In this document: positions 14,714 to 53,448 of the stretch, piece after piece
How positions within the stretch are numbered: the first letter of the stretch is position 1
How the letters are laid out: each line of letters opens with the position of its first letter
Virus record (IMG/VR): IMGVR_UViG_3300050821_009835
Location: 62,001-126,000 of that record
Length of the DNA stretch: 64,000 nucleotides
Strand: one strand, 5' to 3'
The notes under the pieces: generated by a model
The model's input: the letters and a program-made list of their open reading frames with translations, nothing else
Told to the model about the DNA's origin: nothing
The model's database searches: none
Made by a program: the position numbers and the translations under genes

Positions 14714-15421
14714 ATGAATTCACGAATCGCCAAGAAATCACCTGAAGAATCCAGATTCACTCAAATGATGACCGCTCAAGGATGGATGCTTACGGGTGGC
14801 AATAATGTGTGGTTGATCTTCAAGAAAAAGGGCGTGCCTGGCGAGATAGTTGTCACTCGTGGAACTAAAGAATGGGCTTATGATCGTTCTGAAGATGTAG
14901 ACGCTGATCCAGCAGCACAGGGTAAAGGTTTTCAATCTCTGCAAAAGGCTCTACCCACAATTCAGAAAGCCAAAGCTATACACGCTGATTTGGAAGATGA
15001 GGAGACCAATCCTCTTCCTGCTCCTTTTAGGCGAGAAGGACCTAACGTGCAACGCATTACGGGGACAGATCACCAAGGACATGCACAGTTGGGCGATGCT
15101 CAAAATGTTTTAAACTTCCTCCAAGCTAATGGCCCAAAACTCCCACAGCAAGTAGCCGAAGCATTCGGATGGTCGTATGAACAAGCCTATGGGATGCTAG
15201 AACACCTGCGTGCTGAGGGTAAGATAGGCATTAAGCAGATGCGCTATTACGTCAAGCAGGCCAGTCGGTTCCGTTTTAAAAGCAAGATCCTTTACCGCAA
15301 AACCAAGCCAGTCAGCATATTCCAGAGTGAGAACAAAACGATAAAAGAGGGCGGTCCGCAAGGCGACGACATCTCTCGCAAATCTGACGGCGATTACCCT
15401 AAAATGCGTCGCTCACGGTAG
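14714..15421 (+). CDS. Multi-domain protein with winged-HTH-like segment
   Basis: LPQQVAEAFGWSYEQAYGMLEHLRAEGKI; segments bounded by RIAK, KAKA and KQAS. Confidence 0.65.
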   Translation: MNSRIAKKSPEESRFTQMMTAQGWMLTGGNNVWLIFKKKGVPGEIVVTRGTKEWAYDRSEDVDADPAAQGKGFQSLQKALPTIQKAKAIHADLEDEETNPLPAPFRREGPNVQRITGTDHQGHAQLGDAQNVLNFLQANGPKLPQQVAEAFGWSYEQAYGMLEHLRAEGKIGIKQMRYYVKQASRFRFKSKILYRKTKPVSIFQSENKTIKEGGPQGDDISRKSDGDYPKMRRSR

Positions 15422-15433
15422 TATCTAGGCAAC

Positions 15434-15937
15434 ATGAATGTTCAAACAACCTCTGTGCTGCGTCTTGAGAACGCACTCCTCTTAGCAACTAAAGCCCATT
15501 ACGGCCAACTCGATAAAGCCGGGCAGCCCTATATCCTGCATCCAATTGCGGTGATGGAAATGATCCGAAAAGAGTTTGCCGAACACCCCAAAAAGATTCC
15601 AGCGGGTGTGACACTAGACGATCTGCTGATCGCCGCACTACTCCACGACACAGTCGAAGACACTGAAGTTACACTTGACCAAATCGATCAAGAGTTCGGC
15701 CCGGTTGTTCGCGAAATTGTGGATGGTGTGACACGACGTCGTGACTCTTGGAAAGATCATATTGGCGACGAGAATTACATAGATTTCATTTACCGCGCCA
15801 AACGACAGCCCGGCTCGCGGATCGTCAAAACTGCCGATCTTCACCACAACATGAGTCGTATTCATAACTTGCCGCCATCAGAACAAGGCATCTTGAATCG
15901 GTATCTCCGAGCGGAAAGGATTCTGAACGATGAGTAG
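15434..15937 (+). CDS. HD-domain hydrolase, SpoT/Mesh1-like (small alarmone hydrolase type)
   Basis: HYGQ, PYILHP, AALLHDTVEDT, VKTADLHHN. Confidence 0.88.
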   Translation: MNVQTTSVLRLENALLLATKAHYGQLDKAGQPYILHPIAVMEMIRKEFAEHPKKIPAGVTLDDLLIAALLHDTVEDTEVTLDQIDQEFGPVVREIVDGVTRRRDSWKDHIGDENYIDFIYRAKRQPGSRIVKTADLHHNMSRIHNLPPSEQGILNRYLRAERILNDE

Positions 15938-16118
15938 ATTCCTCGTAAGCTACGACCGCACCAAGAAGATCGTAGAAGATACTGAACTCAATGCGGCCTA
16001 TCTTGAGTCTATCATCAAGAAGGATCAAACTCGTTTGGAGATCGCGCTAAAACGACTCTTTCCCAAAGCAGATACCGTCTTTATTCGTCCCGCGCTTACA
16101 GGAGATGGGGATGCCTAA
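15930..16118 (+). CDS. Hypothetical protein
   Basis: Overlaps both neighbours by a few bases. Confidence 0.55.
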   Translation: MSRFLVSYDRTKKIVEDTELNAAYLESIIKKDQTRLEIALKRLFPKADTVFIRPALTGDGDA

Positions 16119-23483: not shown

Positions 23484-25619
23484 TTAAGATTCGAAATCGC
23501 TTTGCACGCCCGTAACTTCATTACTCAAAGGTTCATCTCCATTACGAATAAAATTCCAACGAGTGTAACGATCCGGGACTGGATAATTCTTAGCACGTAA
23601 TGCTTGAAGCGAAGGTCGATCCGTAAACCTCACCATACGTCCGTCAGAAAACTTAACCATCCAGGTTTTGGTTTTCTCTTTGGATTGACAGAGATAGATA
23701 GCCATATCAGCTCCAACGAATCCTTCAGGGAAGTACATATCTGTACCGACTGAGATACTCTTAGGAATCCCGTCGGCAACCTCATAACGCAGATCGTTGT
23801 CAGTCTCCACTGCTACGGCATCGGTAAACTCCGGGGTTTCTGCACTAGAACCCTTCATCATCTGAAACAGCTTATTACGAAAATTATTCCCCAACGATAA
23901 TGTTCCTGAGGGTTTACCACGTTGGTCGTAAACCACCACATACAATGGCTTCGGTTGTGTCTTCAGGGAACGCGACTTGTACTGACGGATAACGCGAGCC
24001 ACATCTCCCAAATCGTTCTTATCGGGCTTCTTAGTGAGAAGTTCCAAATGACGATAGGCGGGTGCCCGCTGGATGAGTTTGCCGGAGCCAGCATATTTGC
24101 GAGTCACCACATGAGCCTGAGGATATTCCCGTTCAAAAGCTGAAACAACTTGAGACAAAAACTCTTCATCTCCAGTCCACCACTGACCTTCAGAACTTTC
24201 ACCAATTGTAATTAAACCGGAAGGAGATATTCTAGCATCTCCTCGAGGAATGCTATCAAACATCCCACCAGAAGTGGGCAAACCCAGTTTTGAGAACCAC
24301 GCTACGTGGCCGAATCGCTTATTCAAATCTGCATTTTTAAAAATCTCAACCTGGCCATTGACAATTGCCCATAGATCGTACCGATTCAATGCTCCCGTGA
24401 CCACTCGCTTTTGTGTCTCGTCGATAAAACTGATGGGCATCTTGAAGGTGCCCTCATAAGTCTTGATCGTCGGATCTCGGCTGACATCGGAAAACTGAGA
24501 CTGAGTGTCCGACTCATTGGTCATGTCTTTGTAGCACTGGAGCACAGCTGCATACAGTTTCACGATCACGTCTTGTTCATACTCCATAGACAACATGAAG
24601 CTGGAAACCTCGTCTAGTAATGCTCGAATTCCCTCGGTGACCATCTCCTGCATGCCCTGAGGATTGTCCTCAACACAGGGGAACTTCAGAGTAAACACTG
24701 TGAAATTGGGGATACCAAGATCCAACTGGAGAGTAACTTCCGGTCGTTCAGCTCGAACGATTGTGATGTTTAGTTCTCCGTTCATCGAGGATAGATAAGC
24801 TGTTTTTGAAGCTACTTTAGTTAATGGAATCTCAGTTGCCCAATTTTCCACTGCACCACCTACTTGTACGGCTTTCACTTTGTCAATCTTCCATGCCTTA
24901 ACAGGATGAACAGCTCCTCTGTGGGCAAGATGAGCGCCGTTTTCTAACAGCCACTTAGACAAATTCTTTGATAGATATTTTTGAAGCTTCTTGCCCACTT
25001 GAGATTGTACAGCAGCTTCTTCTAAACGACGACGCTGTCCTTCTGTCATTTTGTTAGCTAGATAGTCCAATTCCCACTTGATATCATCCGGTGTTTCTGG
25101 TCTATTGACAGGTTGGGCATTTACAATTTGGTCTTTACGTCCATCCAAAAGATATTGCCAAGACTTACGCTGTGCTTCTGTTCCAAGTCCTTTTTTAAGC
25201 TTCTCTTCAAGTTCTTGCTTCTGACGTATATCATCAGTGTATTTTATACGCCAGTACAGCGCCTCGCCTATACTATCCTCATCTGGCACTACATCTCCTA
25301 AAAGATCAGAGCCATTTATAGCAAAAATATAGCCAAATGGATCCTTACCTTCTATGAACTTTGTAGATTTAGATCCAAACATCGAACCGCCCAATGCATA
25401 AATCGCTGCATAACCAAAATTATCTGTCATGTACACCCTGTCCGGCACAGGTGCTTGCATGGCTCGACTCTTTGCTTTCTCAGGCATAGTGATTTCACGA
25501 GGTTGAATACCCTCTGCCATAATTTTTTGCGCTAGATCTTCACGGTCGGTCCCATGATAATATACACGAGCCTTCGCTTCATCGTGGATGGGTGCAGCAT
25601 GTTTTTCCATATGCATCAA
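23484..25619 (-). CDS. Polyvalent protein with N-terminal ADP-ribosyltransferase-like domain
   Basis: YYHGT...VYMTDNFGYAAIYA...PDED; three further unrecognised segments; linkers KHAA, KVASKTAY, RKYAG. Confidence 0.65.
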   Translation of the reverse strand: MMHMEKHAAPIHDEAKARVYYHGTDREDLAQKIMAEGIQPREITMPEKAKSRAMQAPVPDRVYMTDNFGYAAIYALGGSMFGSKSTKFIEGKDPFGYIFAINGSDLLGDVVPDEDSIGEALYWRIKYTDDIRQKQELEEKLKKGLGTEAQRKSWQYLLDGRKDQIVNAQPVNRPETPDDIKWELDYLANKMTEGQRRRLEEAAVQSQVGKKLQKYLSKNLSKWLLENGAHLAHRGAVHPVKAWKIDKVKAVQVGGAVENWATEIPLTKVASKTAYLSSMNGELNITIVRAERPEVTLQLDLGIPNFTVFTLKFPCVEDNPQGMQEMVTEGIRALLDEVSSFMLSMEYEQDVIVKLYAAVLQCYKDMTNESDTQSQFSDVSRDPTIKTYEGTFKMPISFIDETQKRVVTGALNRYDLWAIVNGQVEIFKNADLNKRFGHVAWFSKLGLPTSGGMFDSIPRGDARISPSGLITIGESSEGQWWTGDEEFLSQVVSAFEREYPQAHVVTRKYAGSGKLIQRAPAYRHLELLTKKPDKNDLGDVARVIRQYKSRSLKTQPKPLYVVVYDQRGKPSGTLSLGNNFRNKLFQMMKGSSAETPEFTDAVAVETDNDLRYEVADGIPKSISVGTDMYFPEGFVGADMAIYLCQSKEKTKTWMVKFSDGRMVRFTDRPSLQALRAKNYPVPDRYTRWNFIRNGDEPLSNEVTGVQSDFES

Positions 25620-27550: not shown

Positions 27551-28191
27551 TAGGATCTCCCCATGACCCAACCATCTGCACTGTGGCTTTCTATGTCCCC
27601 CGGTTTTATCAATAGACTGAAAATGCCATTATTGACCCATTTTCTTCCAAGAATAGGGTTTTTTCGACGACTGTTACCAAGACCGATTTTTCGTCCGTGT
27701 TCAGCAGTTTTGGGAATTCCTTTGAATCTTTTCTTGGCTATAGCAGCCCGCTCTTTTCGAAGATGAGGATTTTTAGCCCACCATTTTGTTTGTCCCTCTC
27801 TTATTTTTTGACAGAATTCTTCTGATCTTGGAATATCAGTTAAGGCAGTACGAATTTTCTGCTTGGATAATTCAGTATGGGAACGCCCCGCAAAACTGGG
27901 GATATCCTCACCTCCCATTGTTATGTTGTATCCAATCTCTCTGTCATACGACTGATGAAGAACGATAAAAAAGGTTTCCATCGCGCAGAGCTCTTTAAAA
28001 CTACCCGCTTTGTGTAATGTTTCTGTTCTAAACCCTTCTGGCCCATAAAATCGCAAGGCTTGATAAAAATAACCAGGAGTGCCAATTCGTGCGCAACATT
28101 GGTGCTCTTTCCAACGAGTCTCTTCAGATTTAGTTGTCCTGCCAATATACACCTTGCCGTTAATCACGTTTGTTATCTTATATATTAGCAT
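27550..28191 (-). mobile_element. GIY-YIG homing endonuclease with NUMOD3-like repeats
   Basis: LIYKITNVINGKVYIGRT; GYN; HTELSKQKIR, KTAEHGRKI. Confidence 0.9.
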
Positions 28192-40487: not shown

Positions 40488-43400
40488 TCACACGCCTGTC
40501 ACAATACTTGAGGAATCATCAGTTGTAATTCCTCCCAAGAATGGATTAGTGAGCACTGTACGTTGTAGCGCAGAGTTTACTTGAACTACAGCAGATCCAT
40601 TCGACTGCCAATCTGAGTTACATACAATACTAGAACTAATCTCTGCTTCTGCTATCACTATGGAATTAGAAACGCCATTTTCATTAGCCGTTCCGTGTGT
40701 CTGTAACGTCATATTAGACTGTCGTTCGGCTACAAAGAATGTACCAGGTGACGATGCACCTGAAGTTACTATCAATTCTGGGTTAGAAACTGTTAATTCT
40801 GATCCTGTAACGATAAAGCCTGTGGCACTATCGCCTAGACTTATCGAACAGGCTGTCAGAATTATTCCACAGCCCTGCTCAAAACCACCCGCCTGTACAT
40901 TATTCTGCCAAGTGCAATTTACGAATTCAATATCAGAATTTATTCCGTAAACTGCAGGGTTTGTGAATCCCTGAAATTGAAGATTATTAAAGATAACGCG
41001 AGTTGAATCCACAAAAAATGCGGAGGTGGGGCCGTTGCCAAATCCCGTAAAGGCCGAGGCATCAATAACAACTGGTTGAACCGAATTAGGCGCTGTAGAA
41101 ATTACAAAACGCCCTGAACCTTGAACTGTGAAGGCTATGTTAGCCAAAGCATACCAATTGGTTTGAACAATAGTCCCATCCCCCAAGGGAATTTGAGTTA
41201 AAAACGAAGAATTGTTAGGGGTAATTGCGTAGGGAATTCCTGTATAGATCAATTGAATTGAGCACGGGTCACGTAGTACAGGGGGGAAGAGTGCCATGGC
41301 AGCACCAATAGTTTGCAAAGCAGCAGCTTCGGTTAAACCATTGTTGCTATCGTTGCCATTGGCATTATTAACATAGATGATAATCGGGGCAGACGTTGTC
41401 TGCAAATTTTGACCTAATACAGTTTTAGGCGTTGGAGGCTGGATAGCAAAACCAAAATGCGGGATTGCCGTTGCCCAACCACGTTTACCAGCCGTCAAAA
41501 ATTGAATTTCCTTGCGAATATCATGATTCACTGGGACGATAAAGTCATTAGAGTGCAGAGGAGCCAGGAATGTGTCTTCGACGTTGGCTGCTCGCATGGT
41601 ACTGAAATTATCGTCAAAAATCGTTTCTAACGGGATGTTCTGCAGATCACCGTCATTCCAAGAAATCTGAGATGGGAGAGTTGTAATAATCGGCAATTCA
41701 CGATTATACGGGTAGACATCCTCCAAACCCACTACAGGTGCAGCACCTGTTCCATTCGTGGTAATTAAGGCATCGTTTTCATTGTACAAAATTTCGTAAT
41801 TGCGATTAGCAACACCCTCGCCTTGGTATGGAACATACTGAGATTCTACGATCAAAGTGGAATTTGGGTCGAAAGCTGGGAGTAAAGATGCTACAAAGAA
41901 AAACTGCTGAGTCAACAGATTTACGCTAGCTGGACAGACTACAGTAACCACACCGTCATTGAAACTAGCACTGCTGCATTGAAGTGCAGTGAAACCCGTG
42001 ACAGGAGAATCCAAAACCCAAATGAATGCAACAGTTTCGTTCCCGCTAATGCCTCTTAAGATGGCATTGTTGGAAGCCAAAACCACTGTGTTAGTGTTTG
42101 TGTTTATCGGATCATACGCAATAGAAGCTACCGACACTCGGTTGTCCATAGGAAAACCTGCAATGCCAGTAACGTTACCAACTAAGACTGTTTCTTCAAT
42201 TGTAAGAGCACCCTTTACTGGTGCATTGTAGGCTAATTGACAGGTGTTTTCCCCAATAAACGAGAACACTATCGTAGAAGTTGTGATATTGATTCCCGAA
42301 ATCGGGGAAATGCTAACCACCAATTCATCGGGTCCTGTAGCTGATATTGTTAAATTTGTGATATTATAGAAAGTTCCAGTAGTAAGATCCCAACATTGCG
42401 TGCAATACCACCCGCCTACCTGATCACTAATGGTATCACGAGGGATCACAAATGTTGCAATAGTTGAACCCCCGACAGTAAAGAGTGTAGCCTGAGACCC
42501 TGGTATTTGAAGCCAGATGCGCGTCCCAAATACAACATTGCTATATTCTGGGTTGATGGCCAGAAAATTAGAACATACAATACCCGCCGCAGCCGCAGCA
42601 GAACCTGGCAACGGGGGTAGAATAGGCTGAGGGTTTTGAATCTCATAAGCAGAAATACCATATACCGGGAGTGTTTCACCCGCTACCGCATCTATCAATT
42701 CCCCACCATTTACAGCAAACGGCACAACACGTAGGTCAATTCCGGAAGAAGCAGGATATTGAACACTGAGTGTGACGTACAGTGGGTTAGAAGCTGGGTC
42801 AAATGGAGTCCCGGTTAATGATTTGACAAAAGAAACTGTCACGGCCTTAGAACTCAAACCCGAGAAGCCCAGTTGTCCTTGCAATAAATTGACTGGGATG
42901 AAAGTTCCGTTAATACCGTTTGTAAGCGCAGTCACGGCGACGTCTGTAATGGTGGCATTGGATGTCGCTGGTAATGTGATTGTAAAGGAATCCCCCAGGA
43001 TCCACGGACCGGAAGGATTGCCTGTACCCGTGCTTTTTGAGCTGATAGGAAAAGCCTGCGTAGTCATGAAAGTACGCTGATCTGTACTAAAGCCGTTGGA
43101 GAATCCGTCAAATTGACCCACGGTATCAGCATTGGTAACAGCCGTAGGAGAAACAGCCATTGTATAGGAGAGAGTTGATCCCAATGCTTGCGGAGAATTT
43201 CCCGGCGCAACACCACGAGAAATGGCATAGCGTGAAGCACCTGTAATGATATCGGTGAAACCTTCTGCCATAATCTTGCGAAGATCCCAACCTTCCACAT
43301 TGACTGTGCTGCGTGTATCCACGCAATCATCAGGAAAAATTTGATCAGCTAGTTTACCATCGAAACGACCTGAAACACCATATGCTAGTAGACCTGAACT

Positions 43401-44333
43401 TGAATTACCCGGCACAGCACAACCAAAGGGGTTGGTGGATAGGGAGAATGGCCCAGAATTACGCTGAAAGACAACTGCAACAGGCATGGCGTAGCTATAA
43501 CCATCCATAGTTCCTAATGCATTATTGACGTTGCCATCACCTGCACGCCAAAGTCCCGTGTCGCCGTTAATTGCAGCCACATTGGGAGTAGAACCACCCA
43601 TATTAGCATAGGTGTAAATAGAGATTGGTTGAGAATTACTTGTCTGTGGGAAAACTGACAACGGAACATTATAAACAGATGTATCAACCGTATCTGCGTC
43701 CAACCCGAACTGATATGTAGAAAAATTGTAAGCCAGAGAAACAGGCTGAACATTCAAGCGCCATTGAATTTGCGCTCTTTCTGTTGTGAAAATACCTTGA
43801 AATGGATCCAGCGTATCGTCTGGGAGCGACTCAGCTTGACTAGGGTCAGGTGAGACATTCCCGTAAGGAAAGAAGTAGTTTTGCCCTGTGATAGGATCCG
43901 TGTAATAGCCTTGCCCTGTTTCAGGGTCTAACGCTTGATACCAAAGTTCCAAAAATACAACATAGATACTGGCAGGTTCAGCCAATGTACCGGCAGTCCA
44001 ATATTGTGGAGCGGGTAAAATCACACGATTCGTAGTTGGGTCAGCCGACTGAAACCCGGTAATGGTGACAACTTCATTATTGAAAAGAACGTCAAACGAT
44101 GGGATCAAGAATATACTGCTCGAGAATGGCTGAAATTGCATCGGGGAGTAGAGGATCGCCCCAGAAGTTGTTTGATCTGCCAGAAGACGCGTGCGTTTAG
44201 AATCCGCAAGGTCTTGCATAAGATTTAAATCAGCATCAGAAATCTCATTATCATGGAGGGCAACCACTGTTATAAGTGATTTGCCGGTTGGGTCCAATGT
44301 TCGTGAAACGTTAGATGGATAAAGGATTTGCAT
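40488..44333 (-). CDS. Tail/baseplate protein with C-terminal beta-helix (pectin-lyase-like) domain
   Basis: IYVNNANGNDSNNGLTEAAALQTIGAAM followed by beta-helix-like repeats; GGAG upstream of ATG 44333. Confidence 0.6.
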   Translation of the reverse strand: MQILYPSNVSRTLDPTGKSLITVVALHDNEISDADLNLMQDLADSKRTRLLADQTTSGAILYSPMQFQPFSSSIFLIPSFDVLFNNEVVTITGFQSADPTTNRVILPAPQYWTAGTLAEPASIYVVFLELWYQALDPETGQGYYTDPITGQNYFFPYGNVSPDPSQAESLPDDTLDPFQGIFTTERAQIQWRLNVQPVSLAYNFSTYQFGLDADTVDTSVYNVPLSVFPQTSNSQPISIYTYANMGGSTPNVAAINGDTGLWRAGDGNVNNALGTMDGYSYAMPVAVVFQRNSGPFSLSTNPFGCAVPGNSSSGLLAYGVSGRFDGKLADQIFPDDCVDTRSTVNVEGWDLRKIMAEGFTDIITGASRYAISRGVAPGNSPQALGSTLSYTMAVSPTAVTNADTVGQFDGFSNGFSTDQRTFMTTQAFPISSKSTGTGNPSGPWILGDSFTITLPATSNATITDVAVTALTNGINGTFIPVNLLQGQLGFSGLSSKAVTVSFVKSLTGTPFDPASNPLYVTLSVQYPASSGIDLRVVPFAVNGGELIDAVAGETLPVYGISAYEIQNPQPILPPLPGSAAAAAGIVCSNFLAINPEYSNVVFGTRIWLQIPGSQATLFTVGGSTIATFVIPRDTISDQVGGWYCTQCWDLTTGTFYNITNLTISATGPDELVVSISPISGINITTSTIVFSFIGENTCQLAYNAPVKGALTIEETVLVGNVTGIAGFPMDNRVSVASIAYDPINTNTNTVVLASNNAILRGISGNETVAFIWVLDSPVTGFTALQCSSASFNDGVVTVVCPASVNLLTQQFFFVASLLPAFDPNSTLIVESQYVPYQGEGVANRNYEILYNENDALITTNGTGAAPVVGLEDVYPYNRELPIITTLPSQISWNDGDLQNIPLETIFDDNFSTMRAANVEDTFLAPLHSNDFIVPVNHDIRKEIQFLTAGKRGWATAIPHFGFAIQPPTPKTVLGQNLQTTSAPIIIYVNNANGNDSNNGLTEAAALQTIGAAMALFPPVLRDPCSIQLIYTGIPYAITPNNSSFLTQIPLGDGTIVQTNWYALANIAFTVQGSGRFVISTAPNSVQPVVIDASAFTGFGNGPTSAFFVDSTRVIFNNLQFQGFTNPAVYGINSDIEFVNCTWQNNVQAGGFEQGCGIILTACSISLGDSATGFIVTGSELTVSNPELIVTSGASSPGTFFVAERQSNMTLQTHGTANENGVSNSIVIAEAEISSSIVCNSDWQSNGSAVVQVNSALQRTVLTNPFLGGITTDDSSSIVTGV

Positions 44334-44389
44334 TACAATGTAAACTCCGGAAGCGATTTTTCTTTCACTAAGTAGGGAGAAGTCATTCG

Positions 44390-45049
44390 ATGTCCACAAT
44401 TCCTATTCCACAACCCGTGCCTTCCAGTTCCTACGATTATATTCACCAAGATATCGTAGCAACAGCTCTTATTCTTCCCACAGAGAATGACAGTTTCTAT
44501 AATCCAGTAGCAAATCTACACACAGGGTTTGCTTTTGATGGGAGGCTCTATAGAGCAGGAGTTCCTATTGCTTCAGGAAGCCCACCTACATACACTCATG
44601 CAACATGGTGGACTGAGTACACTTCTCTTCCAAACCCTTATCGGGGAGATCAAGCCAATTTCCCGGCAACCGGGTTACTCCTGCTATCACCCGTTTCCCT
44701 TACGATTCTCGATCAGAGCAACCAGGCACTCCCAATGTGGATGCAATTTCTACTATGCGATTCCTTTATGTTTGCTAATGATTTTTCCACTGGGAACTCA
44801 AATTACCCCAATCCTTTATTGAATGGATGGAACCCAAGCGGTGTAACTTACGCTGACGGAATAGTTTCTGTTATCTATACTCCTGACATTGGAGCGTATT
44901 CCGTGGATGCTGAGGCTGCGGGGTCGCCACCATCTTTAGTTGGACCATTCACGATACAACCTGGTGCCGTTGGAAGCGGCCCCAATATGGTTCTTTCCAT
45001 TGATTTTTCTCACGACTGGGCATACTTGGATGTCCCTGTTGCCAGTTAA
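44390..45049 (+). CDS. Hypothetical protein, structural-like composition
   Basis: Lone plus-strand ORF; GGAG SD; P/S/T-rich. Confidence 0.65.
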   Translation: MSTIPIPQPVPSSSYDYIHQDIVATALILPTENDSFYNPVANLHTGFAFDGRLYRAGVPIASGSPPTYTHATWWTEYTSLPNPYRGDQANFPATGLLLLSPVSLTILDQSNQALPMWMQFLLCDSFMFANDFSTGNSNYPNPLLNGWNPSGVTYADGIVSVIYTPDIGAYSVDAEAAGSPPSLVGPFTIQPGAVGSGPNMVLSIDFSHDWAYLDVPVAS

Positions 45050-45923: not shown

Positions 45924-48900
45924 TTAGAAATTAAGGAGATCAGCCTGCTTCAGTGCTTTCAGAATCGCATCAGCATTCGGCGGTAGAGTAACAATTAAAG
46001 TGCCTTCGTCGTTTCCAGTCATATAGACTTTTCCATCTTTCTCTCTAAGGCGTGGGTCAAAGATGTGATAATCGTCAGCAGCATCTATCCCTTTACCTGT
46101 GCTCGGGAAGAACACATACTTGAATGTATCTACAGTAATGAAAGCCCAAGGGGATAAAGTGTCTTTCTGCCCAGTAGAGGGAATACTAATCGTTGCAACC
46201 TGCTTGGCCAAGCTGACCGGGAGATAAACTCTACCCGACTTAGACATGAAATAGAGAAACTCCTGGTCCGGATGCTCTTTCAAATAAGTACCCACCTGCT
46301 GAGCCTCTTGTTCTGCTCCCTTGCTATACCGTTTTTGAGCTTTTTCTTTTCCCACAGCAGGTAGTATCTCCATACCCGCCTGTTCAATTTCAGACAATGG
46401 CACAACTATACCGCCCGAGCTTTGATATTGGAGAGTATAGCTACCTGCAGGAAGTGTCACTACTTGAGCAGAGTAAGTTCGGCGAGTGATGCTAGACCCT
46501 GTTTGTAGAAGAACTGGAACAGGCTGAGTAATCTTTATCTTGGTGCGAGGAAGAGCGGCGTCTGGCACCTGATTTAATCTTTTTCCAATTTCATCTGTGT
46601 ATGAGACAAACGTGCTCTTCTCTTTCGAGATAGTTGGTAGAGGGAGTCCCGCATATTGTTCAGCCGTTATCTGTTCAATGTTTGGAGACCACATTAAACC
46701 GGAACCAGCCTTGTATTTGTATGGTTTCAGATCTACCCCCAATGCAGAAGCCTGTTTTTCAAATTCAGCCATCCAAGAAGGATTAGGTAACCCATAGAGT
46801 TGTAAACCCGCTAGCATACTAGATCTACGGATTTGTTGCTCATCCACAGCTGCTTTGTAGAACGAGAATGAAGCTGTTTTTCCGACCTCCTTGAACAGTT
46901 TCGGGTCCCAGAACACTTTGTGCTGATCTTTGTATTTTCCAGTGTTCACGCATTCCGTCTTACCTGGGCCTTCCGTATGGGATACAACTGTTTCTGCAAC
47001 GGGAGTACCATCAAAAGTAAAAACGAGCTTCTCCCCTGGCAAGCAGACGATGGGATGACGGAACGCCCAGAATTCTAGATTACCTTCAGGCGGTTCTTCC
47101 CAAAAATGTTCACGAGACGCCTTGGGAACTTCGATCTTGAAAGAGCGTTTCGTCATCCGCCCTGCCTTTTTAGAAGACTCCTTCGCGAGTTCCGCAGGAT
47201 CTAGATCCAACTTAAAAATCTCCACATGATCCGGCGTGAAGACTACACCCGGGATCTTCTTCCAGCTGTAACCGCCCCCGGTTTCATAGACGTTATGCGG
47301 AATGTCCACAGCATAAACTTCTTTACCGAACTCATTGTCCATGTAGACTATGACATAAGCATGATCATCACCCGGTTGTCCGCCTTCGGTCACGCTGCAC
47401 TCAATCGGGACCCGATCATAGACGACCCCGGTTATGGCCTGAGCGATCTCGTCACAGATTCCACCTGTTCCGTTCTCAGGATCCTCACCTGCTTCATTCT
47501 GGTCCCAAGCATCATAGATCTTCTGCGCTTCCGCTGCCATCTCCAGTGTAGCTTCTTGCAAGTAGTGAAGAAGCACAGTCCGGTTACGGGTGGCGGTATG
47601 CTCAAGGCATCCTCCGGACAGGCAAGCGACGCAGACCTTCGCAGCGATCCGAGAAGATGCGGCAGTCTTATGAGACAGAAACTTCTGCCACTCCACGCCA
47701 AATTCCTGAAGTGGGAGATTATCCGGCAGCTCTGTTAGCCAAAGATACAGAGCAACCGGGTCGACGTCCTTGGGCTTGATCACGTCATAGTGGTTGTCCA
47801 TGACACGAATGAGGCCGTTCTTGAGAGAAAGTCCGACGACGTTACCGAAAGTCACGCGCTGAAGTTCTCTATCAATGTCCGCGTTTGCAGTTTTGGAAGC
47901 ACTAAATTTTACAAATGCCTTATCCTGAATCTGCCTACCGTAAGCAATATCGTCCAGTATAGCACCGTCGTAACCTTGTTTCTGGAGTACCCGAACCAAC
48001 TGACTCACTTCCGTGCCGTGAAGATTGCTATCGAAAATCGAGGCAGGCGTATTCATCTCATTGTTAATGCCCAATTTAGAAGCTTCCGCTACGATGACAT
48101 CCCAAGGTGCAGGATTACTAATGGATATTTCTCCCTCGTTTAATTGCCCGCCCGTTCCGAAACGATCATTGTACATCTCAACATAGGACTCTGCCATTTC
48201 CTTGTTAGGAGTCCAATAAGTCACGGCCCCGCCTGGTTTGCTGTTGCCTCCGTTATACATCTTTGAAGCAATTTTGGACGCCAAGGTTAAGCTGTAATCC
48301 TTCTGCCCATGCGTTGCGCTGGGTGTCTCTTCAACTGGATGAGTCTTTTTCAAATCCTCCCAAATCTTTCCAGATTCTCCAATGCGATAGTTGGCTGGAC
48401 TCTCTACTTTCTTGACACCGTGTTCTTTGAGAAAGTCAAACCCCATCCTATAGAGGTAGGAGCCATATCCCTGCCGACGAAAATCGTATTCAACCCAAAC
48501 ATTATGGACAGCTGCGACAGTCCCTGGAGAATACACAATAAATTGAATCTTGCCAATGTAGACGCCCTGGAGATTTTTAGCCTCGAATGTATGGATTATT
48601 GCCCCAGACTTGACTCCAGCCTCTTTCTCAGTATGCTCAATCTGAATTTCTGAAGGATTTGCCGGCGCGGTTGCAGTTTTTCTGGTTCCAATGTATGCTT
48701 GGATGGTTTTATCACCGCGCATCTTAGCCGCATCCCGACGATGATAGCCGTCAACGACGTATTTATTGCTGCCAATAACGATTGGGGGTAGCGCGGTCTT
48801 GCGTTGCGAGTATCCCCAAGCCACTGGAGGATGTTTACCCTGCCCCCAATGGATGCTGGGATCATTAATATCTATGGTCTGAAGAACGTACTCATCTGCT

Positions 48901-51374
48901 TCAGCTATCCATTCTGGATCTTCAAATGGTTTTCGTTCCCACCCCTTTTTATGGAGAGAGTTAACATACTCGAGCATTCCATCGGGGGTTAATAAACTTG
49001 GATATCGTTCATCGTTCTCCTTAGCTCGTTTGTTTTCTTTGCGCCCCCAAATTTCGATCGGCAGATTCCTTCCGATTATCAAAGCCGCTATAGCACGATG
49101 TTGTCCATTCAAAATAACCAAACGACCATCCTTTAACCGAGAAACAGGCACAGGCGGAGGGATGCTTCCCGCTTTCCACATATCCGCGTATTCTTGAGCT
49201 TTTTGTTTACTTCCCTCTGGGTTGTTTAATTCTTCTTGCGTATAAAGTTGACTTGGGTCCATTGAAGTCGTTTCTAGAAGTGTCAAACGACCGGCCTCAA
49301 ACTCCAACAAATCGTTGAAAGATTCATCTGTCGGCTCCATGTATTTTAAAGAATCATGACCCGAATGGAAAGCTGCTTGTTTATGACTTCCAAACGGAAC
49401 CCCATTACGCGCTCCATTGGCTCGAGAGAGCACGAGAGAGCCGCAGGAGAAGGAGATACCCTGCGCCCAATCTGACCCCTCGTACTTGTGAGCAACCTCT
49501 GGCTTCACGTAAGCGATAGTTACATGGGGTTTATAGGGAAAATCATCTTTACGATTTCCTATAGCAGAATCGACCAATTCATGGAGGACATGTAAATCTG
49601 CAGCATGAGCTTCGGCAACAATAGGAACTCCTCCGGCTTCAGATGCTGTAAAAGCATGCATTTTACCCAATACGACAGAAAAATTGTGCTGCTCACCTAC
49701 AGCCCAGGCCAGTTTTTCTAGATTCTCTTCCACACCAAACTTTACCGTAATGTGAGGATCATCTTCAATCCCCTTCACATCTAGATCCTCGGCAGGTATA
49801 CGGCGGGCTACAGCGAAGACATCGTCTCGTGCTGGACCAGATAATCCGATAATCACAAGAGGCTTCTTATCCTTGCCCAAATACTTAGCCATTCTGAGGT
49901 CGTAGCCCATCCTGCTGTTGCTGAAAGCAATTCTGACATCAGGGTATTTTTCGCGCAGACGCTCAAGAACTGGACGTATCTTAGTCTCCCCTTCAGAAGA
50001 GAAGGTGGAGATTTTCAATTCATGACGACCAGAATCTTGTACAAACTTTACAGCAGCTTCGAGTAACTGGCGAGCATACCCTCGTCCTTCATAACCTTTA
50101 CGAGTCGTGATATGCATTAACCAAAACTGATCTGGATTGTTTGGGTTAGGGTAGAGTTCACAATCTGCTACAATCTTGCCATCGTCAAGGATATCAAAAT
50201 GGGGTTCCTGACGAAGATCAGAATGACGAAGATACATTGTCTCTTCCATCAAACGGTTGTCTTCTTGCTGGAATTTGCGAATCTGTTCACCCTTCATGAA
50301 AACAGGTGGAGAGGCTGCGGTTTTAGCTGCGGTTACAGTCTTTAATTTATCGGGAGGATTTTGCCAAGCACCCCCATTTTCTTTCCACCCGATAATCGAG
50401 ACTGTAGTACCCTCTATTAAACGAATTTCTGCTTCTTCAGGGGCAGCTAGATTGCAATAAGCTGTTGCCAACCAGTCAACCTGACCTGGGACAACTGTTC
50501 CTTTAAAAACTAAAGCTGCACCCCCCATAGCATTGTAAGGCTGGGCTGCATTTTCTTCCCAAGACCAAAACTTACCGAAATTATCTGGATTTATCTGATT
50601 TATGGAAGCAGAAATAGCTCGATAAACGGGTAACCGATTTGTCCTGGCGAGCTCCTTAAGATGCTCTTCAACAGGGGCATAGGAAAGTTCTAGAAACTGC
50701 TCTGCTGCAACCTCGAGTTGCTCTTCGGGTAAGTTTTGATTGATATTATTTTCCCGAAGATACTGATGAAATTCTCCAGAAGGAATTGTATCCCAAAAAC
50801 CGCCGTAATTTAAGACTTGATCAAAGCTGGGAACACCCGAGGCTGCTTTAGATTCAATCCCAAACTCCTCGGGCATCATCAATTCAAGAGGGATAAATGA
50901 TTGAGTCCCTTTCTGCTTCTCAGGCTGATTGACATATCCGTTAGTCTCTTCTACGAAAGTTTCGTCTCGTCCGGGAGTCTGTTTGTGGGTTGCGGTCTTC
51001 CTAGATTCCCGAATAGGACTTCCCATTTCCGTTTGATAGATGTTAATCCGTTTTATCAATTCTTTAGGAATTTTCTTACCGGGGTAAACCCAAGTTACAT
51101 TATCCTCTAAAAGGACTATTCCCTCCTCCAACTTAGAAGGGTCTACAACAACGATAGCAATTTCATCAACCTCAGCATATCTGGATCCCCAATGAGCAGC
51201 ATAATCTAAATCCTCAGCGAAGTAGATCCCTCCGTTTGGGACATAAAGACCGTCGCGCTTGATTTTTTCCACATTTTCCACCGGGGTGCCATGGAAAATT
51301 TCTGGGGGGAAATACTTAGCGACGACGCCTTTTGGCGCGACACTTAGCCCCGGCTTTTGCAACAAAGGATTCAT
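45924..51374 (-). CDS. Giant polyvalent protein (about 1816 aa): ART x3, GNAT x2, 2H phosphoesterase, ParB-like x2, papain-like, unknown domains
   Basis: FHGT; YRA...FWSW...EEAE; GYEGRGYA; HITV/HVTI; NGQHR; DGYHR; FRRQGYG; YNG...YWT...GYDG; GICD...DHAY...VDI. Start uncertain (51374 or 51392) and overlaps the JAB gene end. Confidence 0.85.
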   Translation of the reverse strand: MNPLLQKPGLSVAPKGVVAKYFPPEIFHGTPVENVEKIKRDGLYVPNGGIYFAEDLDYAAHWGSRYAEVDEIAIVVVDPSKLEEGIVLLEDNVTWVYPGKKIPKELIKRINIYQTEMGSPIRESRKTATHKQTPGRDETFVEETNGYVNQPEKQKGTQSFIPLELMMPEEFGIESKAASGVPSFDQVLNYGGFWDTIPSGEFHQYLRENNINQNLPEEQLEVAAEQFLELSYAPVEEHLKELARTNRLPVYRAISASINQINPDNFGKFWSWEENAAQPYNAMGGAALVFKGTVVPGQVDWLATAYCNLAAPEEAEIRLIEGTTVSIIGWKENGGAWQNPPDKLKTVTAAKTAASPPVFMKGEQIRKFQQEDNRLMEETMYLRHSDLRQEPHFDILDDGKIVADCELYPNPNNPDQFWLMHITTRKGYEGRGYARQLLEAAVKFVQDSGRHELKISTFSSEGETKIRPVLERLREKYPDVRIAFSNSRMGYDLRMAKYLGKDKKPLVIIGLSGPARDDVFAVARRIPAEDLDVKGIEDDPHITVKFGVEENLEKLAWAVGEQHNFSVVLGKMHAFTASEAGGVPIVAEAHAADLHVLHELVDSAIGNRKDDFPYKPHVTIAYVKPEVAHKYEGSDWAQGISFSCGSLVLSRANGARNGVPFGSHKQAAFHSGHDSLKYMEPTDESFNDLLEFEAGRLTLLETTSMDPSQLYTQEELNNPEGSKQKAQEYADMWKAGSIPPPVPVSRLKDGRLVILNGQHRAIAALIIGRNLPIEIWGRKENKRAKENDERYPSLLTPDGMLEYVNSLHKKGWERKPFEDPEWIAEADEYVLQTIDINDPSIHWGQGKHPPVAWGYSQRKTALPPIVIGSNKYVVDGYHRRDAAKMRGDKTIQAYIGTRKTATAPANPSEIQIEHTEKEAGVKSGAIIHTFEAKNLQGVYIGKIQFIVYSPGTVAAVHNVWVEYDFRRQGYGSYLYRMGFDFLKEHGVKKVESPANYRIGESGKIWEDLKKTHPVEETPSATHGQKDYSLTLASKIASKMYNGGNSKPGGAVTYWTPNKEMAESYVEMYNDRFGTGGQLNEGEISISNPAPWDVIVAEASKLGINNEMNTPASIFDSNLHGTEVSQLVRVLQKQGYDGAILDDIAYGRQIQDKAFVKFSASKTANADIDRELQRVTFGNVVGLSLKNGLIRVMDNHYDVIKPKDVDPVALYLWLTELPDNLPLQEFGVEWQKFLSHKTAASSRIAAKVCVACLSGGCLEHTATRNRTVLLHYLQEATLEMAAEAQKIYDAWDQNEAGEDPENGTGGICDEIAQAITGVVYDRVPIECSVTEGGQPGDDHAYVIVYMDNEFGKEVYAVDIPHNVYETGGGYSWKKIPGVVFTPDHVEIFKLDLDPAELAKESSKKAGRMTKRSFKIEVPKASREHFWEEPPEGNLEFWAFRHPIVCLPGEKLVFTFDGTPVAETVVSHTEGPGKTECVNTGKYKDQHKVFWDPKLFKEVGKTASFSFYKAAVDEQQIRRSSMLAGLQLYGLPNPSWMAEFEKQASALGVDLKPYKYKAGSGLMWSPNIEQITAEQYAGLPLPTISKEKSTFVSYTDEIGKRLNQVPDAALPRTKIKITQPVPVLLQTGSSITRRTYSAQVVTLPAGSYTLQYQSSGGIVVPLSEIEQAGMEILPAVGKEKAQKRYSKGAEQEAQQVGTYLKEHPDQEFLYFMSKSGRVYLPVSLAKQVATISIPSTGQKDTLSPWAFITVDTFKYVFFPSTGKGIDAADDYHIFDPRLREKDGKVYMTGNDEGTLIVTLPPNADAILKALKQADLLNF

Positions 51375-51861
51375 AGTTCTTCTTTCGTTCAACTGCTAAT
51401 GGACGAAGGCACGGCCAATAGCTCACAACCGTCTTCCGCCTACTACCATCTTTTGGAATTTGAATAGCACAAACAGCCAAAATCGATTCTTGCGTGTTCA
51501 AACTGTCCCGGATATCGTGTTCGCTTAAAACCGCGTCGTCGCAATCGGGGTGAGTATGAATCGTCCCCAAGAACTCGAGTTTGATTCTTCGACCAGATAC
51601 AGAGTCATAGATCTCCGTGTCCTTGGCATCATCCTCATGCCGATCTAGTTCTAGGTCTTCATCAATGCAGACTACTTTACGAGTGTTGGTTTCCTTTTTA
51701 TTGATGTCGCATTTAATGAAGGCACAAATGTACACTGTGTCTCCACGGACATAACCCCATAAAGCCGAAATGGTTTCTTTGGGGGCATAACGCAACGCTC
51801 GCCGACGAAAGCGCCCTTCTTCCCTGCCGTCAACAACGACTTTCAAGAAAGGTGCGATCAT
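51316..51861 (-). CDS. JAB/MPN+ metalloprotease
   Basis: Catalytic E (KETIS) and HxHx7Sx2D motif (IHTHPDCDDAVLSEHD); SD AAGGA. Confidence 0.85.
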   Translation of the reverse strand: MIAPFLKVVVDGREEGRFRRRALRYAPKETISALWGYVRGDTVYICAFIKCDINKKETNTRKVVCIDEDLELDRHEDDAKDTEIYDSVSGRRIKLEFLGTIHTHPDCDDAVLSEHDIRDSLNTQESILAVCAIQIPKDGSRRKTVVSYWPCLRPLAVERKKNYESFVAKAGAKCRAKRRRR

Positions 51862-51870
51862 CTTAGTTCC

Positions 51871-53448
51871 TTAGTTTAAAATACTATTCACCATGGTCGT
51901 TACTCGACCTTCTGTTTCGCCCCGGCGCTCACATAACTTCTGCAAGCGAGTTTTCTTTGCTTTCTTGACTTTAATCTCAAAATCCTCGCTCGCTGTAAGA
52001 TGATACCGCGCTGCAGCAAGCCTACGTTTTAAATGAGCCACTACCCCTGTTTGTAACGGGCAGCCCGTGCGACGCTCAATCTCTCCTTGCAGTTCGTCAA
52101 TGCTTGATTCGCCCGCACCAACCAATGCTCCCAGCATTTCCAGAATCTGAACTTCAGCCTCAGACAACTGGCCCATGCTCGGCTTATAGCCCAAGTCATG
52201 GTTCACCTCTTGCAAAGCATGCATCAGAATGGAAGCAGCCTGAATTTCTACAACCGTGCCCTCATACCAAACAGTATAGTGGAGTGCTCGATAAATCTGA
52301 CCGTCTTCTGGATCAGCATCGCGTGGAAATTCCTTTACGGGTCTGGCCTGTTCAAAATTTGATTCAATGATCGCTCGAACCTTTTCTTGATCATGAGGGA
52401 AATACAATGCTACACGTACCCCAGCCAGGTCCTTAATGTCTTGCTGAATTGCTGCCAAATCCTCATACTGATTTTTGTTGTTACGATTCATTAGCTTATC
52501 ACGCAAACTTCTCGTACGTTTGGCACGGCTGGTGACCAGCGCCTTAATCTTGTCTGCTTGGAATATATCCTCAAGAAACTCTTGCACCTCCAAAGCCACG
52601 TGTTCGTAAAACTCGAAATCGTAACTATCGAGGAACCGCATAATGAGCTTGGGAACACTGGCAGAAGTCTTCAAAACAGTTCCTATGGAATCTGATCCTC
52701 CATCATGCTTTAACGCTTGTCTTATTCGAGAATCAAAATTAATCGGGTATTCGGTGAGTTCGTATAATTTCTGTACCATAGCGGTTAAAACTCCCGCATG
52801 TTGTAGATCTTTTGCTACTTCATATCGACCCAATCGCGTTCTTCCAGAAATAATTGTATAGGGTAACTGTCCGGCTGTTCTCCCTTCCAACAGTGCAGTC
52901 AATACTCCCGAGGTCTTGTATTCTTCTTCTGAAATGATGTAATTCGAAAAATGCAATTTACTGATAAGTTCAGGATTATAGACACCCTTCAGATGCTGAT
53001 CTGCACCCGTCTTATTCACCTGATTTTGATTCTCTGCGACAGCGTCAAAGAGATACTTGAGAGGAATCTCGTCAATGTCCCCAAGATTCTTGTCTCCCCA
53101 CATATCGGTGTAGCATTTCTCTGCGCTCAAGAGATCCGGGAAGCCAAGGAACACTTTGTATTCGTCAAATTCACCTTTATCGTCAAGTTGTTCAACAGCA
53201 TAGGCATATTCAGCCGATTCATCTTCTCCGACATACACATCCACTGGTTCTTGATCCCCGGATCCAGAAGTGGCGGGAATATATCCATAATCTGCCAACA
53301 TTTCTTTCTCCCAATGAGTTCCATCGGGTAAATCTCCCTCTCGAATTCCTCCCTTTGGGGTTTCGATGATTATCGGCAGCCCCTGGTAAGAAGACGGTCG
53401 ATTAACGTCTCCGCTTGCTCTCTTAAGGAATGTAGCAGTCAAACTCAT
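51871..53448 (-). CDS. Polyvalent protein: pyrophosphatase-like domain + RelA/SpoT nucleotidyltransferase (small alarmone synthetase-like)
   Basis: IETPKG...DYGYI...D.EPVDVYV (PPase fold); RAKRTRSLRDKL, DLAGVRV, YRALHY, VEIQ, EVNHDLGYK (RelA/SpoT). Confidence 0.85.
   Translation of the reverse strand: MSLTATFLKRASGDVNRPSSYQGLPIIIETPKGGIREGDLPDGTHWEKEMLADYGYIPATSGSGDQEPVDVYVGEDESAEYAYAVEQLDDKGEFDEYKVFLGFPDLLSAEKCYTDMWGDKNLGDIDEIPLKYLFDAVAENQNQVNKTGADQHLKGVYNPELISKLHFSNYIISEEEYKTSGVLTALLEGRTAGQLPYTIISGRTRLGRYEVAKDLQHAGVLTAMVQKLYELTEYPINFDSRIRQALKHDGGSDSIGTVLKTSASVPKLIMRFLDSYDFEFYEHVALEVQEFLEDIFQADKIKALVTSRAKRTRSLRDKLMNRNNKNQYEDLAAIQQDIKDLAGVRVALYFPHDQEKVRAIIESNFEQARPVKEFPRDADPEDGQIYRALHYTVWYEGTVVEIQAASILMHALQEVNHDLGYKPSMGQLSEAEVQILEMLGALVGAGESSIDELQGEIERRTGCPLQTGVVAHLKRRLAAARYHLTASEDFEIKVKKAKKTRLQKLCERRGETEGRVTTMVNSILN

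What the first reader, a model, noticed from the sequence alone, without database searches (positions are those of the whole stretch)
14714..53448. The same K-x-A punctuation marks four dispersed genes, suggesting a shared cargo/processing code
Seen: besides the giant ORF, the motif sits at N-termini and domain joints of 23484..25619 (EKHAA, TKVASKTAY, RKYAG), 51871..53448 (LKRAS, NKTGA, LKTSAS) and 14714..15421 (SRIAK, KAKA, VKQAS). A related basic segment appears in 14714 (FKSKILYRK) and at the polyprotein start (NPLLQK). I did not notice such punctuation in the housekeeping enzymes. Inference: a genome-wide class of proteins shares a packaging or maturation signal that lets new enzymatic domains be plugged into the virion.
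Basis: partly seen in the sequence, partly recalled or inferred. Interest (0 to 1): 0.72.

Follow-up and report, generated by a model that had tools for sequence, protein, structure and literature searches.

The report
Lys-x-Ala joints in phage polyproteins
A short Lys-Thr-Ala mark sits at nearly every joint between enzyme modules in the giant "polyvalent" effector proteins of this soil jumbo phage and its relatives. It probably marks where a neighbouring metallopeptidase cuts them apart, but cutting has not been shown.

Summary
The window is part of a 265-kb jumbo myovirus record from IMG/VR.

The specific form K-T-A is real. It occurs 7 times in the giant ORF against 0.53 expected. In 56 independent relatives it is seen 94 times against 21 expected. 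It is the tripeptide most enriched at the borders of shuffled homology blocks: 67 of 86 lie at borders, against 31±4 for shifted borders.

These are the InPase|RelA-SpoT joint of 51871..53448, the N-terminus and module joints of 23484..25619, and the end of the wHTH module of 14714..15421.

All four genes belong to one class of modular polyvalent proteins. A small metallopeptidase gene always lies beside the giant gene: JAB in 6 loci, SprT-like in 6 others, never both.

Best reading: K-x-[AGS] is a processing site of injected polyproteins. Cleavage, packaging into the virion and the protease's identity are inferred, not shown.

The parts
45924..51392 (-). Giant polyvalent protein P0004. It has 1822 aa from the TTG start; the real start is probably the ATG at 51374, giving MNPLLQK. 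About 12 modules: YHGT ART-like, SHKTP mini-module, ART-PolyVal-like, GNAT, 2H phosphoesterase, ParB-like, second GNAT, and others.
50991..50999 (-). KTA132: joint between the N-terminal YHGT domain and the SHKTP mini-module
50841..50849 (-). KAA182: end of the mini-module, start of the ART-PolyVal-like module
50316..50324 (-). KTA357: joint before the GNAT domain. 26 HSP ends pile up at residues 355-364, and the site is at the edge of a low-pLDDT linker.
49374..49382 (-). KQA671: C-terminal edge of the 2H phosphoesterase domain, followed by a low-confidence linker
48672..48680 (-). KTA905: joint between the ParB-like module and the second GNAT
48267..48275 (-). KIA1040: start of the 'MYNGG' module. 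Relatives have KTA or KAA at this position.
47886..47894 (-). KTA1167: module joint
47661..47669 (-). KTA1242: module joint
47163..47171 (-). KKA1408: joint before the 'FKIEVPK' module. Relatives have KTA, KHA or KRS here.
46872..46880 (-). KTA1505: end of the 'FKIEVPK' module. Relatives have GKTAS or GKTGA here.
51316..51861 (-). Prok-JAB (JAMM) metallopeptidase gene, 181 aa, with a polybasic C-terminal tail. It overlaps the start of the giant gene and is the candidate processing peptidase.
51871..53448 (-). P0003: InPase, an inserted module, then a RelA/SpoT nucleotidyltransferase. The same gene lies beside the giant gene in relatives.
53416..53424 (-). KRA9 in the conserved N-terminal 'TATFL[KQR]RA' before the InPase domain. 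Two relatives have KTA here.
53005..53013 (-). KTG146: end of the InPase domain, start of the inserted module
52663..52671 (-). KTS260: joint before the RelA/SpoT part. K-x-[AGS] is present in 10 of 10 homologues and K-T-[AS] in 6.
23484..25619 (-). P0002: YHGT ART-like module A (residues 2-271), module B (272-410 and about 501-700), and an inserted module (about 411-500) shared with P0008 and P0009
25596..25604 (-). KHA6 (EKHAAPIHDEA): homologous to SKTAAPLHAEA at an internal joint of Tunturi_5 gp205
24798..24818 (-). KVA268 and KTA272: the A|B joint. About 45 stand-alone homologues of module B begin M-x(0-8)-K-x-[AS]-Y-[IVL]-S-P.
24090..24098 (-). KYA508: the border where homology to stand-alone module B resumes after the inserted module
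14714..15421 (+). P0001: a 235-aa protein whose wHTH module (residues 115-180) recurs as one module of P0066, a relative of P0002
15254..15262 (+). KQA181: directly after the wHTH module. P0066 has GKTSA at the equivalent place, and P0067 and P0068 have KTAS, KQAS or KRAS.

Best explanation
The four genes encode modular 'polyvalent' effector proteins of a jumbo myovirus: ADP-ribosyltransferase-like, GNAT, 2H phosphoesterase, ParB-like, InPase, RelA/SpoT and wHTH modules strung together.

In this phage lineage every module is bounded by a short protein-level mark, K-x-[A/G/S]-[A/S/T], most often K-T-A. The mark lies in or next to a flexible linker.

I propose it is the recognition and cleavage site at which the polyprotein is cut into separate effector domains. 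The cutter would be the small metallopeptidase always encoded just upstream of, or inside, the giant gene. That peptidase is a JAB/JAMM enzyme with a polybasic tail in this phage, and a SprT-like zincin in sister lineages. Because every module carries the same mark, modules can be gained, lost and reordered without changing the processing machinery.

Shown: the enrichment, the position at module borders, the conservation, the class membership and the peptidase synteny.
Inferred: cleavage itself, which peptide bond is cut, which enzyme cuts, and packaging and injection of these proteins.
For: 1. KTA is the top-enriched tripeptide in P0004 (7 against 0.53) and in P0008 (8 against 0.61).
2. In 56 independent representatives found through an unrelated mini-module profile, KTA is seen 94 times against 21.1 expected (p 2.5e-31). 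With the query region removed it is 86 against 19.4.
3. Of all 8000 tripeptides, KTA is the most enriched at BLAST block borders in the first set (24 of 36, p 2e-10). K.A is the top gapped pair there (63 of 126, p 6e-16).
4. In the independent set K.A is 325 of 531 at borders (p 1.7e-30). 67 of 86 KTA lie at borders, against 31.4±4.4 for circularly shifted borders; 0 of 1000 shifts reach the observed value.
5. HSP starts peak at K-1 to K, and HSP ends at K+2 to K+3. Both neighbouring modules therefore run up to the mark.
6. The codons differ between sites and there is no DNA repeat, so selection acts on the protein.
7. At the InPase|RelA-SpoT joint, K-x-[AGS] is kept in 10 of 10 homologues down to about 40% identity, while the rest of the linker varies.
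8. In the AF2 model, KTA357 and KQA671 lie at the edges of confident GNAT and 2H folds, next to low-pLDDT linkers.
9. A peptidase gene sits between the InPase gene and the giant gene in 12 of 12 loci with readable context. It is JAB in 6 (often overlapping the giant gene's start) and SprT-like in 6, never both.
10. Processing of polyvalent proteins by associated peptidases was predicted on other grounds (PMC5512222).
Against: - There are no proteomic or biochemical data, so cleavage is not shown.
- Known JAB enzymes cut after a Gly-Gly C-terminus of ubiquitin-like proteins (my own knowledge of the family), not at K-x-A. The JAB here could instead be an anti-defence enzyme.
- About 45 stand-alone homologues of P0002 module B carry K-x-[AS] 1-9 residues from their own start, where there is nothing to cut off. 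That fits a module cap, or a relic of fusion and fission, as well as it fits a site.
- The GNAT|2H joint of P0004 (about residues 494-501) lacks the mark.
- Some relatives have E-A-S instead of K-x-A before the mini-module.
- The peptidase exclusivity count ignores phylogeny.
- The complex prediction of JAB with a P0004 fragment gave no verdict.
Confidence: 0.45

Rival explanations
1. K-x-A is an uncleaved module cap or linker, inherited through repeated gene fusion and fission. Each module once was (or often becomes) a stand-alone gene beginning M-(x)-K-T-A. The mark persists at joints as a vestige, or as a neutral, well-tolerated linker that makes domain shuffling safe.
For: - Stand-alone homologues begin MSKTAY, MATSKTAY or MKQAY.
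- Some joints keep a Met just before the mark: MKTAF, MTKTAA, MPKTS, and NMSKTAY inside P0067.
- In L001 the same modules are split over several genes.
Against: - The proteome of this phage shows no general N-terminal bias for the mark: 10 seen against 8.2 expected.
- Most joints have no Met.
- K and A are kept while x and the flanks drift, even at 40% identity. That argues for ongoing selection rather than a relic.
- The mark also closes modules at their C-terminal side, as at the end of the mini-module and of the FKIEVPK module.
- A peptidase gene is invariably linked.
Confidence: 0.3
2. The mark is a recognition motif for something other than cleavage. Examples are a lysine that is modified (acetylated or ADP-ribosylated by the protein's own GNAT or ART modules, or conjugated to a ubiquitin-like tag that the JAB removes), or a docking motif for packaging or ejection.
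For: - The invariant residue is Lys.
- GNAT and ART modules are in the same polypeptide.
- JAB enzymes are isopeptidases acting at Lys-linked conjugates (knowledge of the family).
Against: - SprT-like zincins replace the JAB in half of the loci, and these are plain proteases.
- No ubiquitin-like or E1/E2 gene was seen in the neighbourhoods listed.
Confidence: 0.12
3. The sites in the three smaller genes are chance matches to a very loose pattern, and only the giant ORF has a real motif.
For: K-x-A counts in the three genes are at or below expectation. P0001 has only one supported site.
Against: The supported sites coincide with block borders and are conserved in homologues:
- P0003 joint, 10 of 10.
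- P0002 N-terminus, matching an internal KTA joint of Tunturi_5 gp205.
- P0002 A|B joint.
- P0001 post-wHTH site, matching KTSA in P0066.
Confidence: 0.1

Closest known systems
Polyvalent proteins of phages and conjugative elements (Iyer, Burroughs, Anand, de Souza, Aravind 2017; PMC5512222)
   Same: Many unrelated enzymatic domains (ART, GNAT, 2H, ParB, InPase, RelA/SpoT-type) in one phage polypeptide. Associated zincin peptidases were predicted to process them, and they are thought to be injected with the DNA.
   Different: The word 'linker' does not occur in that paper, and none of the 12 of 24 passages shown for cleavage or processing terms names a site motif. Here a specific K-x-[AGS] mark bounds nearly every module. 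The partner peptidase is a separate small JAB or mini-SprT gene. A disordered SHKTP mini-module and an MNPLLQ N-terminal tag are further lineage marks.
Prohead-protease processing of head and ejection proteins in T4, phiKZ and SPN3US
   Same: Giant myoviruses package many proteins that are cut at a short consensus during head maturation (abstracts of PMC5694885 and PMC10052503; PMC7824862).
   Different: Those sites end in Glu ((L/I)-x-E in T4, (A/S/G)-x-E in phiKZ and SPN3US; my own knowledge, not read from the papers here). They are cut by an S77/S80-type serine protease. Here the mark is K-x-A with no Glu, and no S77 or S78 protease was detectable.
Phage P1 DdrB/DarB internal head proteins
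   Same: Large anti-restriction proteins packaged in the head. DdrB is proteolytically processed and carries a zincin domain (PMC5512222).
   Different: One cut rather than a repeated punctuation. No K-x-A motif is reported.
Viral polyprotein processing by DNA-dependent or site-specific proteases (adenovirus protease; herpesvirus assemblin cutting at Ala|Ser). This is my own knowledge, not tested here.
   Same: In concept: a small-residue P1 site repeated in precursor proteins. The polybasic tail of the JAB and the SprT family (DNA-dependent metalloproteases) hint at protease action on DNA.
   Different: Unrelated enzymes and hosts. This is a resemblance only.

Membership tests
Polyvalent proteins (Iyer et al. 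2017) | Two or more domains of disparate biochemical activity in one polypeptide | tested here: met
   P0004 has GNAT and 2H phosphoesterase domains. P0003 has InPase and RelA/SpoT. Relatives add SprT-like, ART-PolyVal, Tpt1 and ParB_N.
Polyvalent proteins (Iyer et al. 2017) | Carries domains defined for the class (InPase PF18823, ART-PolyVal PF18760, MPTase-PolyVal PF18818) | tested here: inconclusive
   InPase is met in P0003 (E 4.6e-29). ART-PolyVal is recorded for relatives P0011, P0014 and P0229 but gave no Pfam hit in P0004 or P0002. MPTase-PolyVal is absent from the record.
Polyvalent proteins (Iyer et al. 2017) | Encoded by a phage or conjugative element | tested here: met
   The source is an IMG/VR virus record of 264,912 bp. 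It has a baseplate wedge/J protein, tail sheath and portal.
Polyvalent proteins (Iyer et al. 2017) | Packaged in the virion and delivered with the DNA | not testable with these tools
   There are no proteome data. The Tunturi 5 paper has no virion proteomics.
Substrates of T4/phiKZ-type prohead proteases | Cleavage consensus ending in Glu: (L/I)-x-E or (A/S/G)-x-E | tested here: not met
   The enriched border motif is K-T-A or K-x-[AGS], and no Glu position is enriched.
Substrates of T4/phiKZ-type prohead proteases | S77 or S78 prohead protease encoded by the phage | tested here: inconclusive
   No match to PF03420, PF04586 or PF00574. The record is only about 78% complete and very divergent.
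JAB/JAMM metallopeptidases (gene 51316..51861) | Match to a JAB profile above the curated cut-off | tested here: met
   PF14464 Prok-JAB scores 27.4 bits against a cut-off of 25, E 3.2e-6. Homologues in L013, L019 and L021 are unmarked Prok-JAB hits and L014 is a weak one.
JAB/JAMM metallopeptidases (gene 51316..51861) | JAMM metal site H-x-H-x(7)-S-x-x-D with an upstream Glu | tested here: inconclusive
   HTHPDCDDAVLSEHD is read directly from the sequence and conserved in 5 relatives. The spacing is 8 rather than the canonical 7. The upstream Glu is present in KET/KEH.
JAB/JAMM metallopeptidases (gene 51316..51861) | Substrate is a ubiquitin-like protein ending in Gly-Gly | not tested
   No Ubl or E1/E2 gene is listed in the neighbourhoods, but none was specifically searched for.
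Proteolytically processed viral polyproteins | Demonstrated cleavage at the repeated site | not testable with these tools
   Needs mass spectrometry or a cleavage assay.

The most novel reading that the evidence does not exclude
A lineage of soil jumbo phages uses a universal three-residue 'cut here' code (K-x-A) to release a dozen effector enzymes from one injected polyprotein. The cutting would be done by a DNA-tethered metallopeptidase, either a JAB enzyme with a polybasic tail or an interchangeable mini-SprT. That would be the first JAB known to cleave linear, non-ubiquitin sites. It would be a bacteriophage analogue of adenovirus-style processing of cargo on DNA inside the virion.
Probability: 0.2. 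Interest if true: 0.85.

Novelty: new variant of a known kind. Interest (0 to 1): 0.62.

Why it matters
Polyvalent proteins are thought to be a main early counter-defence weapon of phages and plasmids. Whether and how they are cut into active pieces has stayed a prediction.

A simple, conserved joint mark gives three things:
- A way to parse these giant proteins into functional modules, including unknown ones.
- A concrete, mutable site and two candidate enzymes for testing the processing hypothesis.
- An explanation of how such proteins can shuffle modules freely.

A cultured relative (Tunturi 5 on Tunturiibacter) carries the same marks, so the test is feasible.

Tried and rejected
- Megablast of the region against GenBank phages: no match.
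- Pfam searches of the phage's own genome for T4 or HK97 capsid, S77, S78 and ClpP proteases, and MPTase-PolyVal: nothing.
- PHROGs on about 55 ORFs found only sheath, portal, baseplate and replication genes. No capsid, scaffold or protease was found. The idea that a prohead protease recognises K-x-A could therefore not be examined.
- DNA-level repeat or recombination hotspot: rejected, because the codons and flanks differ between sites.
- General N-terminal 'MSKTA' habit of this phage's genes: rejected, 10 seen against 8.2 expected.
- Relatives of P0001 and of the 525-aa protein after the tail tube in IMG/VR: none.
- Complex prediction of the JAB with P0004 residues 120-200: no verdict, so not evidence either way.
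- Atlas look-up of P0002 module B: no informative neighbour.
- The SHKTP mini-module as a capsid-targeting peptide: not supported. It usually travels with the following ART-PolyVal-like module, so it may simply be that module's disordered N-terminal arm.
Full report
CONTEXT

The window is bases 62001-126000 of a single 264,912-bp IMG/VR virus record, GC 46% and about 78% complete. The record encodes a tail sheath, a portal and a baseplate J/wedge protein, so it is a jumbo myovirus. It has no close relative among GenBank phages. The only isolate sharing parts of the genes in question is Tunturiibacter phage Tunturi_5, a 309-kb soil myovirus of Acidobacteriota (PMC11924767).

THE OBSERVATION

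The quoted strings exist.
- Genome-wide there are 330 occurrences against 330.2 expected.
- The three smaller genes have 1, 5 and 2 against 1.8, 3.9 and 2.6 expected.

The specific tripeptide K-T-A is different:
- It occurs 7 times in the 1822-aa giant ORF (45924..51392, minus strand) against 0.53 expected. The other 315 ORFs together have 27 against about 22.
- It is the second most extreme tripeptide excess in any protein of the genome. The first comes from Ig-like repeats in a tail-fibre protein.
- Only 3 of 2000 shuffles of the giant protein give any tripeptide as extreme.

WHAT THE GIANT ORF IS

Pfam finds GNAT and 2H phosphoesterase domains. Relatives P0006-P0011 carry the same modules, plus ParB_N, SprT-like, Tpt1 and ART-PolyVal, in different orders. 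This matches the 'polyvalent proteins' of Iyer et al. 2017 (PMC5512222).

THE MARK SITS AT MODULE BORDERS

I defined borders as the ends of BLAST blocks shared between eight such proteins, and asked without prior choice which tripeptides concentrate within 6 residues of a border.
- KTA came first of all tripeptides: 24 of 36, with 18% of sequence in such windows, p 2e-10.
- K.A came first of all gapped pairs: 63 of 126, p 6e-16.

In P0004, six of seven KTA lie at such borders, together with KAA182, KQA671, KIA1040 and KKA1408. About 11 of 12-13 border clusters carry K-x-A. The GNAT|2H joint does not.

INDEPENDENT TEST

A profile of a 50-residue mini-module (SHKTP...), unrelated to the question, retrieved 61 cluster representatives from 1.8 billion proteins. 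56 of them were new.
- KTA is the most over-represented tripeptide in them: 94 against 21.1 expected, p 2.5e-31.
- With the query region removed it is 86 against 19.4, second only to YHG, a motif of a recurrent domain.
- K.A is again the top border-enriched pair: 325 of 531, p 1.7e-30.
- With circularly shifted borders as control, 67 of 86 KTA lie at borders against 31.4±4.4. None of 1000 shifts reaches the observed value.
- Block starts peak at the K and block ends at the A or the next residue. Both neighbours therefore run up to the mark.
- Position preferences are T at +1, A at +2, S/A/T at +3, and small residues at -2.
- The codons differ from site to site, so the constraint is on the protein.
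- In an AlphaFold model of residues 120-700, KTA357 and KQA671 lie at the edges of confident GNAT and 2H folds beside low-confidence linkers. The mini-module is disordered.

THE THREE SMALLER GENES

51871..53448 (P0003) is InPase plus RelA/SpoT.
- In ten homologues down to about 40% identity, the joint before the RelA/SpoT part always has K-x-[AGS] (K-T-[AS] in six), while the rest of the linker varies.
- The extra module of P0003 is flanked by NKTGA and LKTSAS.
- The N-terminal FL[KQR]RA is conserved, and two relatives have KTA there.

23484..25619 (P0002) consists of a YHGT ART-like module A, a module B, and an insert shared with P0008 and P0009.
- Its N-terminal EKHAAPIHDEA aligns with SKTAAPLHAEA at an internal joint of Tunturi_5 gp205. 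That 853-aa polyvalent protein has three more KTA joints.
- SKTAY is the A|B joint.
- RKYAG lies where homology to module B resumes.
- About 45 stand-alone homologues of module B start M-x(0-8)-K-x-[AS]-Y-[IVL]-S-P.

14714..15421 (P0001) has a wHTH module.
- The module recurs at 43% identity inside P0066, a P0002 relative.
- Directly after it P0066 has GKTSA where P0001 has VKQAS. Sister proteins have KTAS, KQAS or KRAS.

Of 316 ORFs, only these four and 3613..4092 share modules with the class. The hits of P0002-P0004 are by construction. Those of P0001 and 3613..4092 are not.

NEIGHBOURHOOD

Twelve loci have readable context. In most the order is: A1-like gene on the opposite strand, InPase gene, a small metallopeptidase, then the giant gene or genes.
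- The peptidase is a Prok-JAB of about 185 aa in G000, L013, L014, L018, L019 and L021. In four of these loci (G000, L013, L014, L018) it overlaps the giant gene's start by about 60-75 nt, and it always ends in a run of Arg/Lys.
- It is a SprT-like zincin in L001, L015, L020, L022, L023 and L025. There it is either a stand-alone protein of about 110 aa or lies inside the giant protein.
- No locus has both. Fisher's exact test gives about 0.001, without phylogenetic correction.

Two unrelated metallopeptidases in the same slot argue that a peptidase activity is coupled to the giant protein. This agrees with the 2017 prediction.

INTERPRETATION

The best-supported reading is that K-x-[AGS] is the processing site of a polyprotein of injected effectors. 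The shared mark then explains the free shuffling of modules.

Still inferred:
- That cutting happens at all.
- Where it happens: after the A, as the small residues at +2 and +3 suggest, or after the K.
- Which enzyme does it.
- Whether the proteins are packaged.

The main rival is an uncleaved cap or linker left by fusion and fission. It is favoured by the stand-alone proteins that begin with the mark. It is weakened by the absence of any N-terminal habit in this proteome, by conservation of K and A amid drifting flanks, and by the linked peptidase.

Known giant-phage maturation sites end in Glu. That is my own knowledge; only the abstracts of the SPN3US papers were seen here. No S77 or S78 protease was found. 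This is therefore not the T4/phiKZ system.

In the papers I could search I found no earlier description of this joint motif.

VERDICT

It defined the pattern too loosely and could not have demonstrated it from this genome alone. The 'shared processing code' idea is a reasonable, testable hypothesis. The 'virion cargo' part is untested.

Noticed in passing
window 51354..51374 (minus strand), N-terminus of the giant ORF: MNPLLQ[KRP] is a conserved N-terminal tag of the giant proteins (P0004, P0006, P0007, P0206, P0219; MNPLLH in L001). It also occurs internally at module borders in P0224 and P0237. It is distinct from K-x-A and its function is unknown.
   Followed up: partly
window 50841..50999 (minus strand), P0004 residues 132-182: A mini-module of about 50 aa (SHK-TP..D....ETN.Y...PE....P.LE..P..F) is flanked by the mark on both sides. 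It is found in 61 cluster representatives, is predicted disordered, and usually sits directly before an R-S-E type ART-PolyVal-like module. It has no Pfam family.
   Followed up: partly
window 51316..51861 (minus strand) and L013, L014, L018, L019, L021: The JAB peptidase genes all end in a polybasic tail (for example KRRRR). Four of the six (G000, L013, L014, L018) overlap the start of the giant gene, which suggests translational coupling and perhaps DNA binding.
   Followed up: partly
L001, L015, L020, L022, L023, L025 versus G000, L013, L014, L018, L019, L021: SprT-like zincin and JAB are mutually exclusive in the slot beside the giant gene: 6 loci against 6.
   Followed up: yes
window 3613..4092 (+): A 159-aa protein with an N-terminal signal or transmembrane segment shares a module with the C-terminal part of relative P0006 (residues 1344-1443). 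It is the only other ORF of the genome linked to the class.
   Followed up: no
G000 220187..222646 (L010:14187-16646), portal gene, outside the window: The portal has DKTAALFG at about residue 86, after a basic N-terminal arm. It is kept as SKTAALFG in a 78%-identical portal (L017). It could be a maturation site, but the comparison is too close to tell.
   Followed up: partly
G000 259261..260838 (L012:13261-14838), outside the window: A 525-aa coiled-coil, Ala/Pro-rich protein lies just after the sheath and a 147-aa ORF. It carries ASAKTAD and AASKTAV. No family hit and no relatives were found. It might be a scaffold or an assembly protein.
   Followed up: partly
window 27550..28191 (-); G000 222693..223442; L013 8939..9496: GIY-YIG homing endonuclease genes are scattered through the structural and effector regions. 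One is inserted between the InPase and JAB genes in L013.
   Followed up: no
window 34578..40481 (-) and 40488..44399 (-): Two very large Ser/Thr/Asn/Gly-rich proteins (1967 and 1303 aa) lie next to the baseplate J gene. The first has four He_PIG Ig-like repeats. They are probably tail fibres. They are low in Lys and lack the mark.
   Followed up: no
window 53634..55286 (+): A homologue of the T5 A1-type 'DNA transfer protein' (phrog_1745, E 2.5e-167) is divergently transcribed from the effector cluster. A 550-aa gene stands in the same place in L013 and L019.
   Followed up: no
whole record G000: No major capsid protein, scaffold, prohead protease or clear large terminase could be recognised by Pfam or PHROGs in 265 kb. 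The same proteins occur on a 340-kb contig, so part of the genome is missing.
   Followed up: partly
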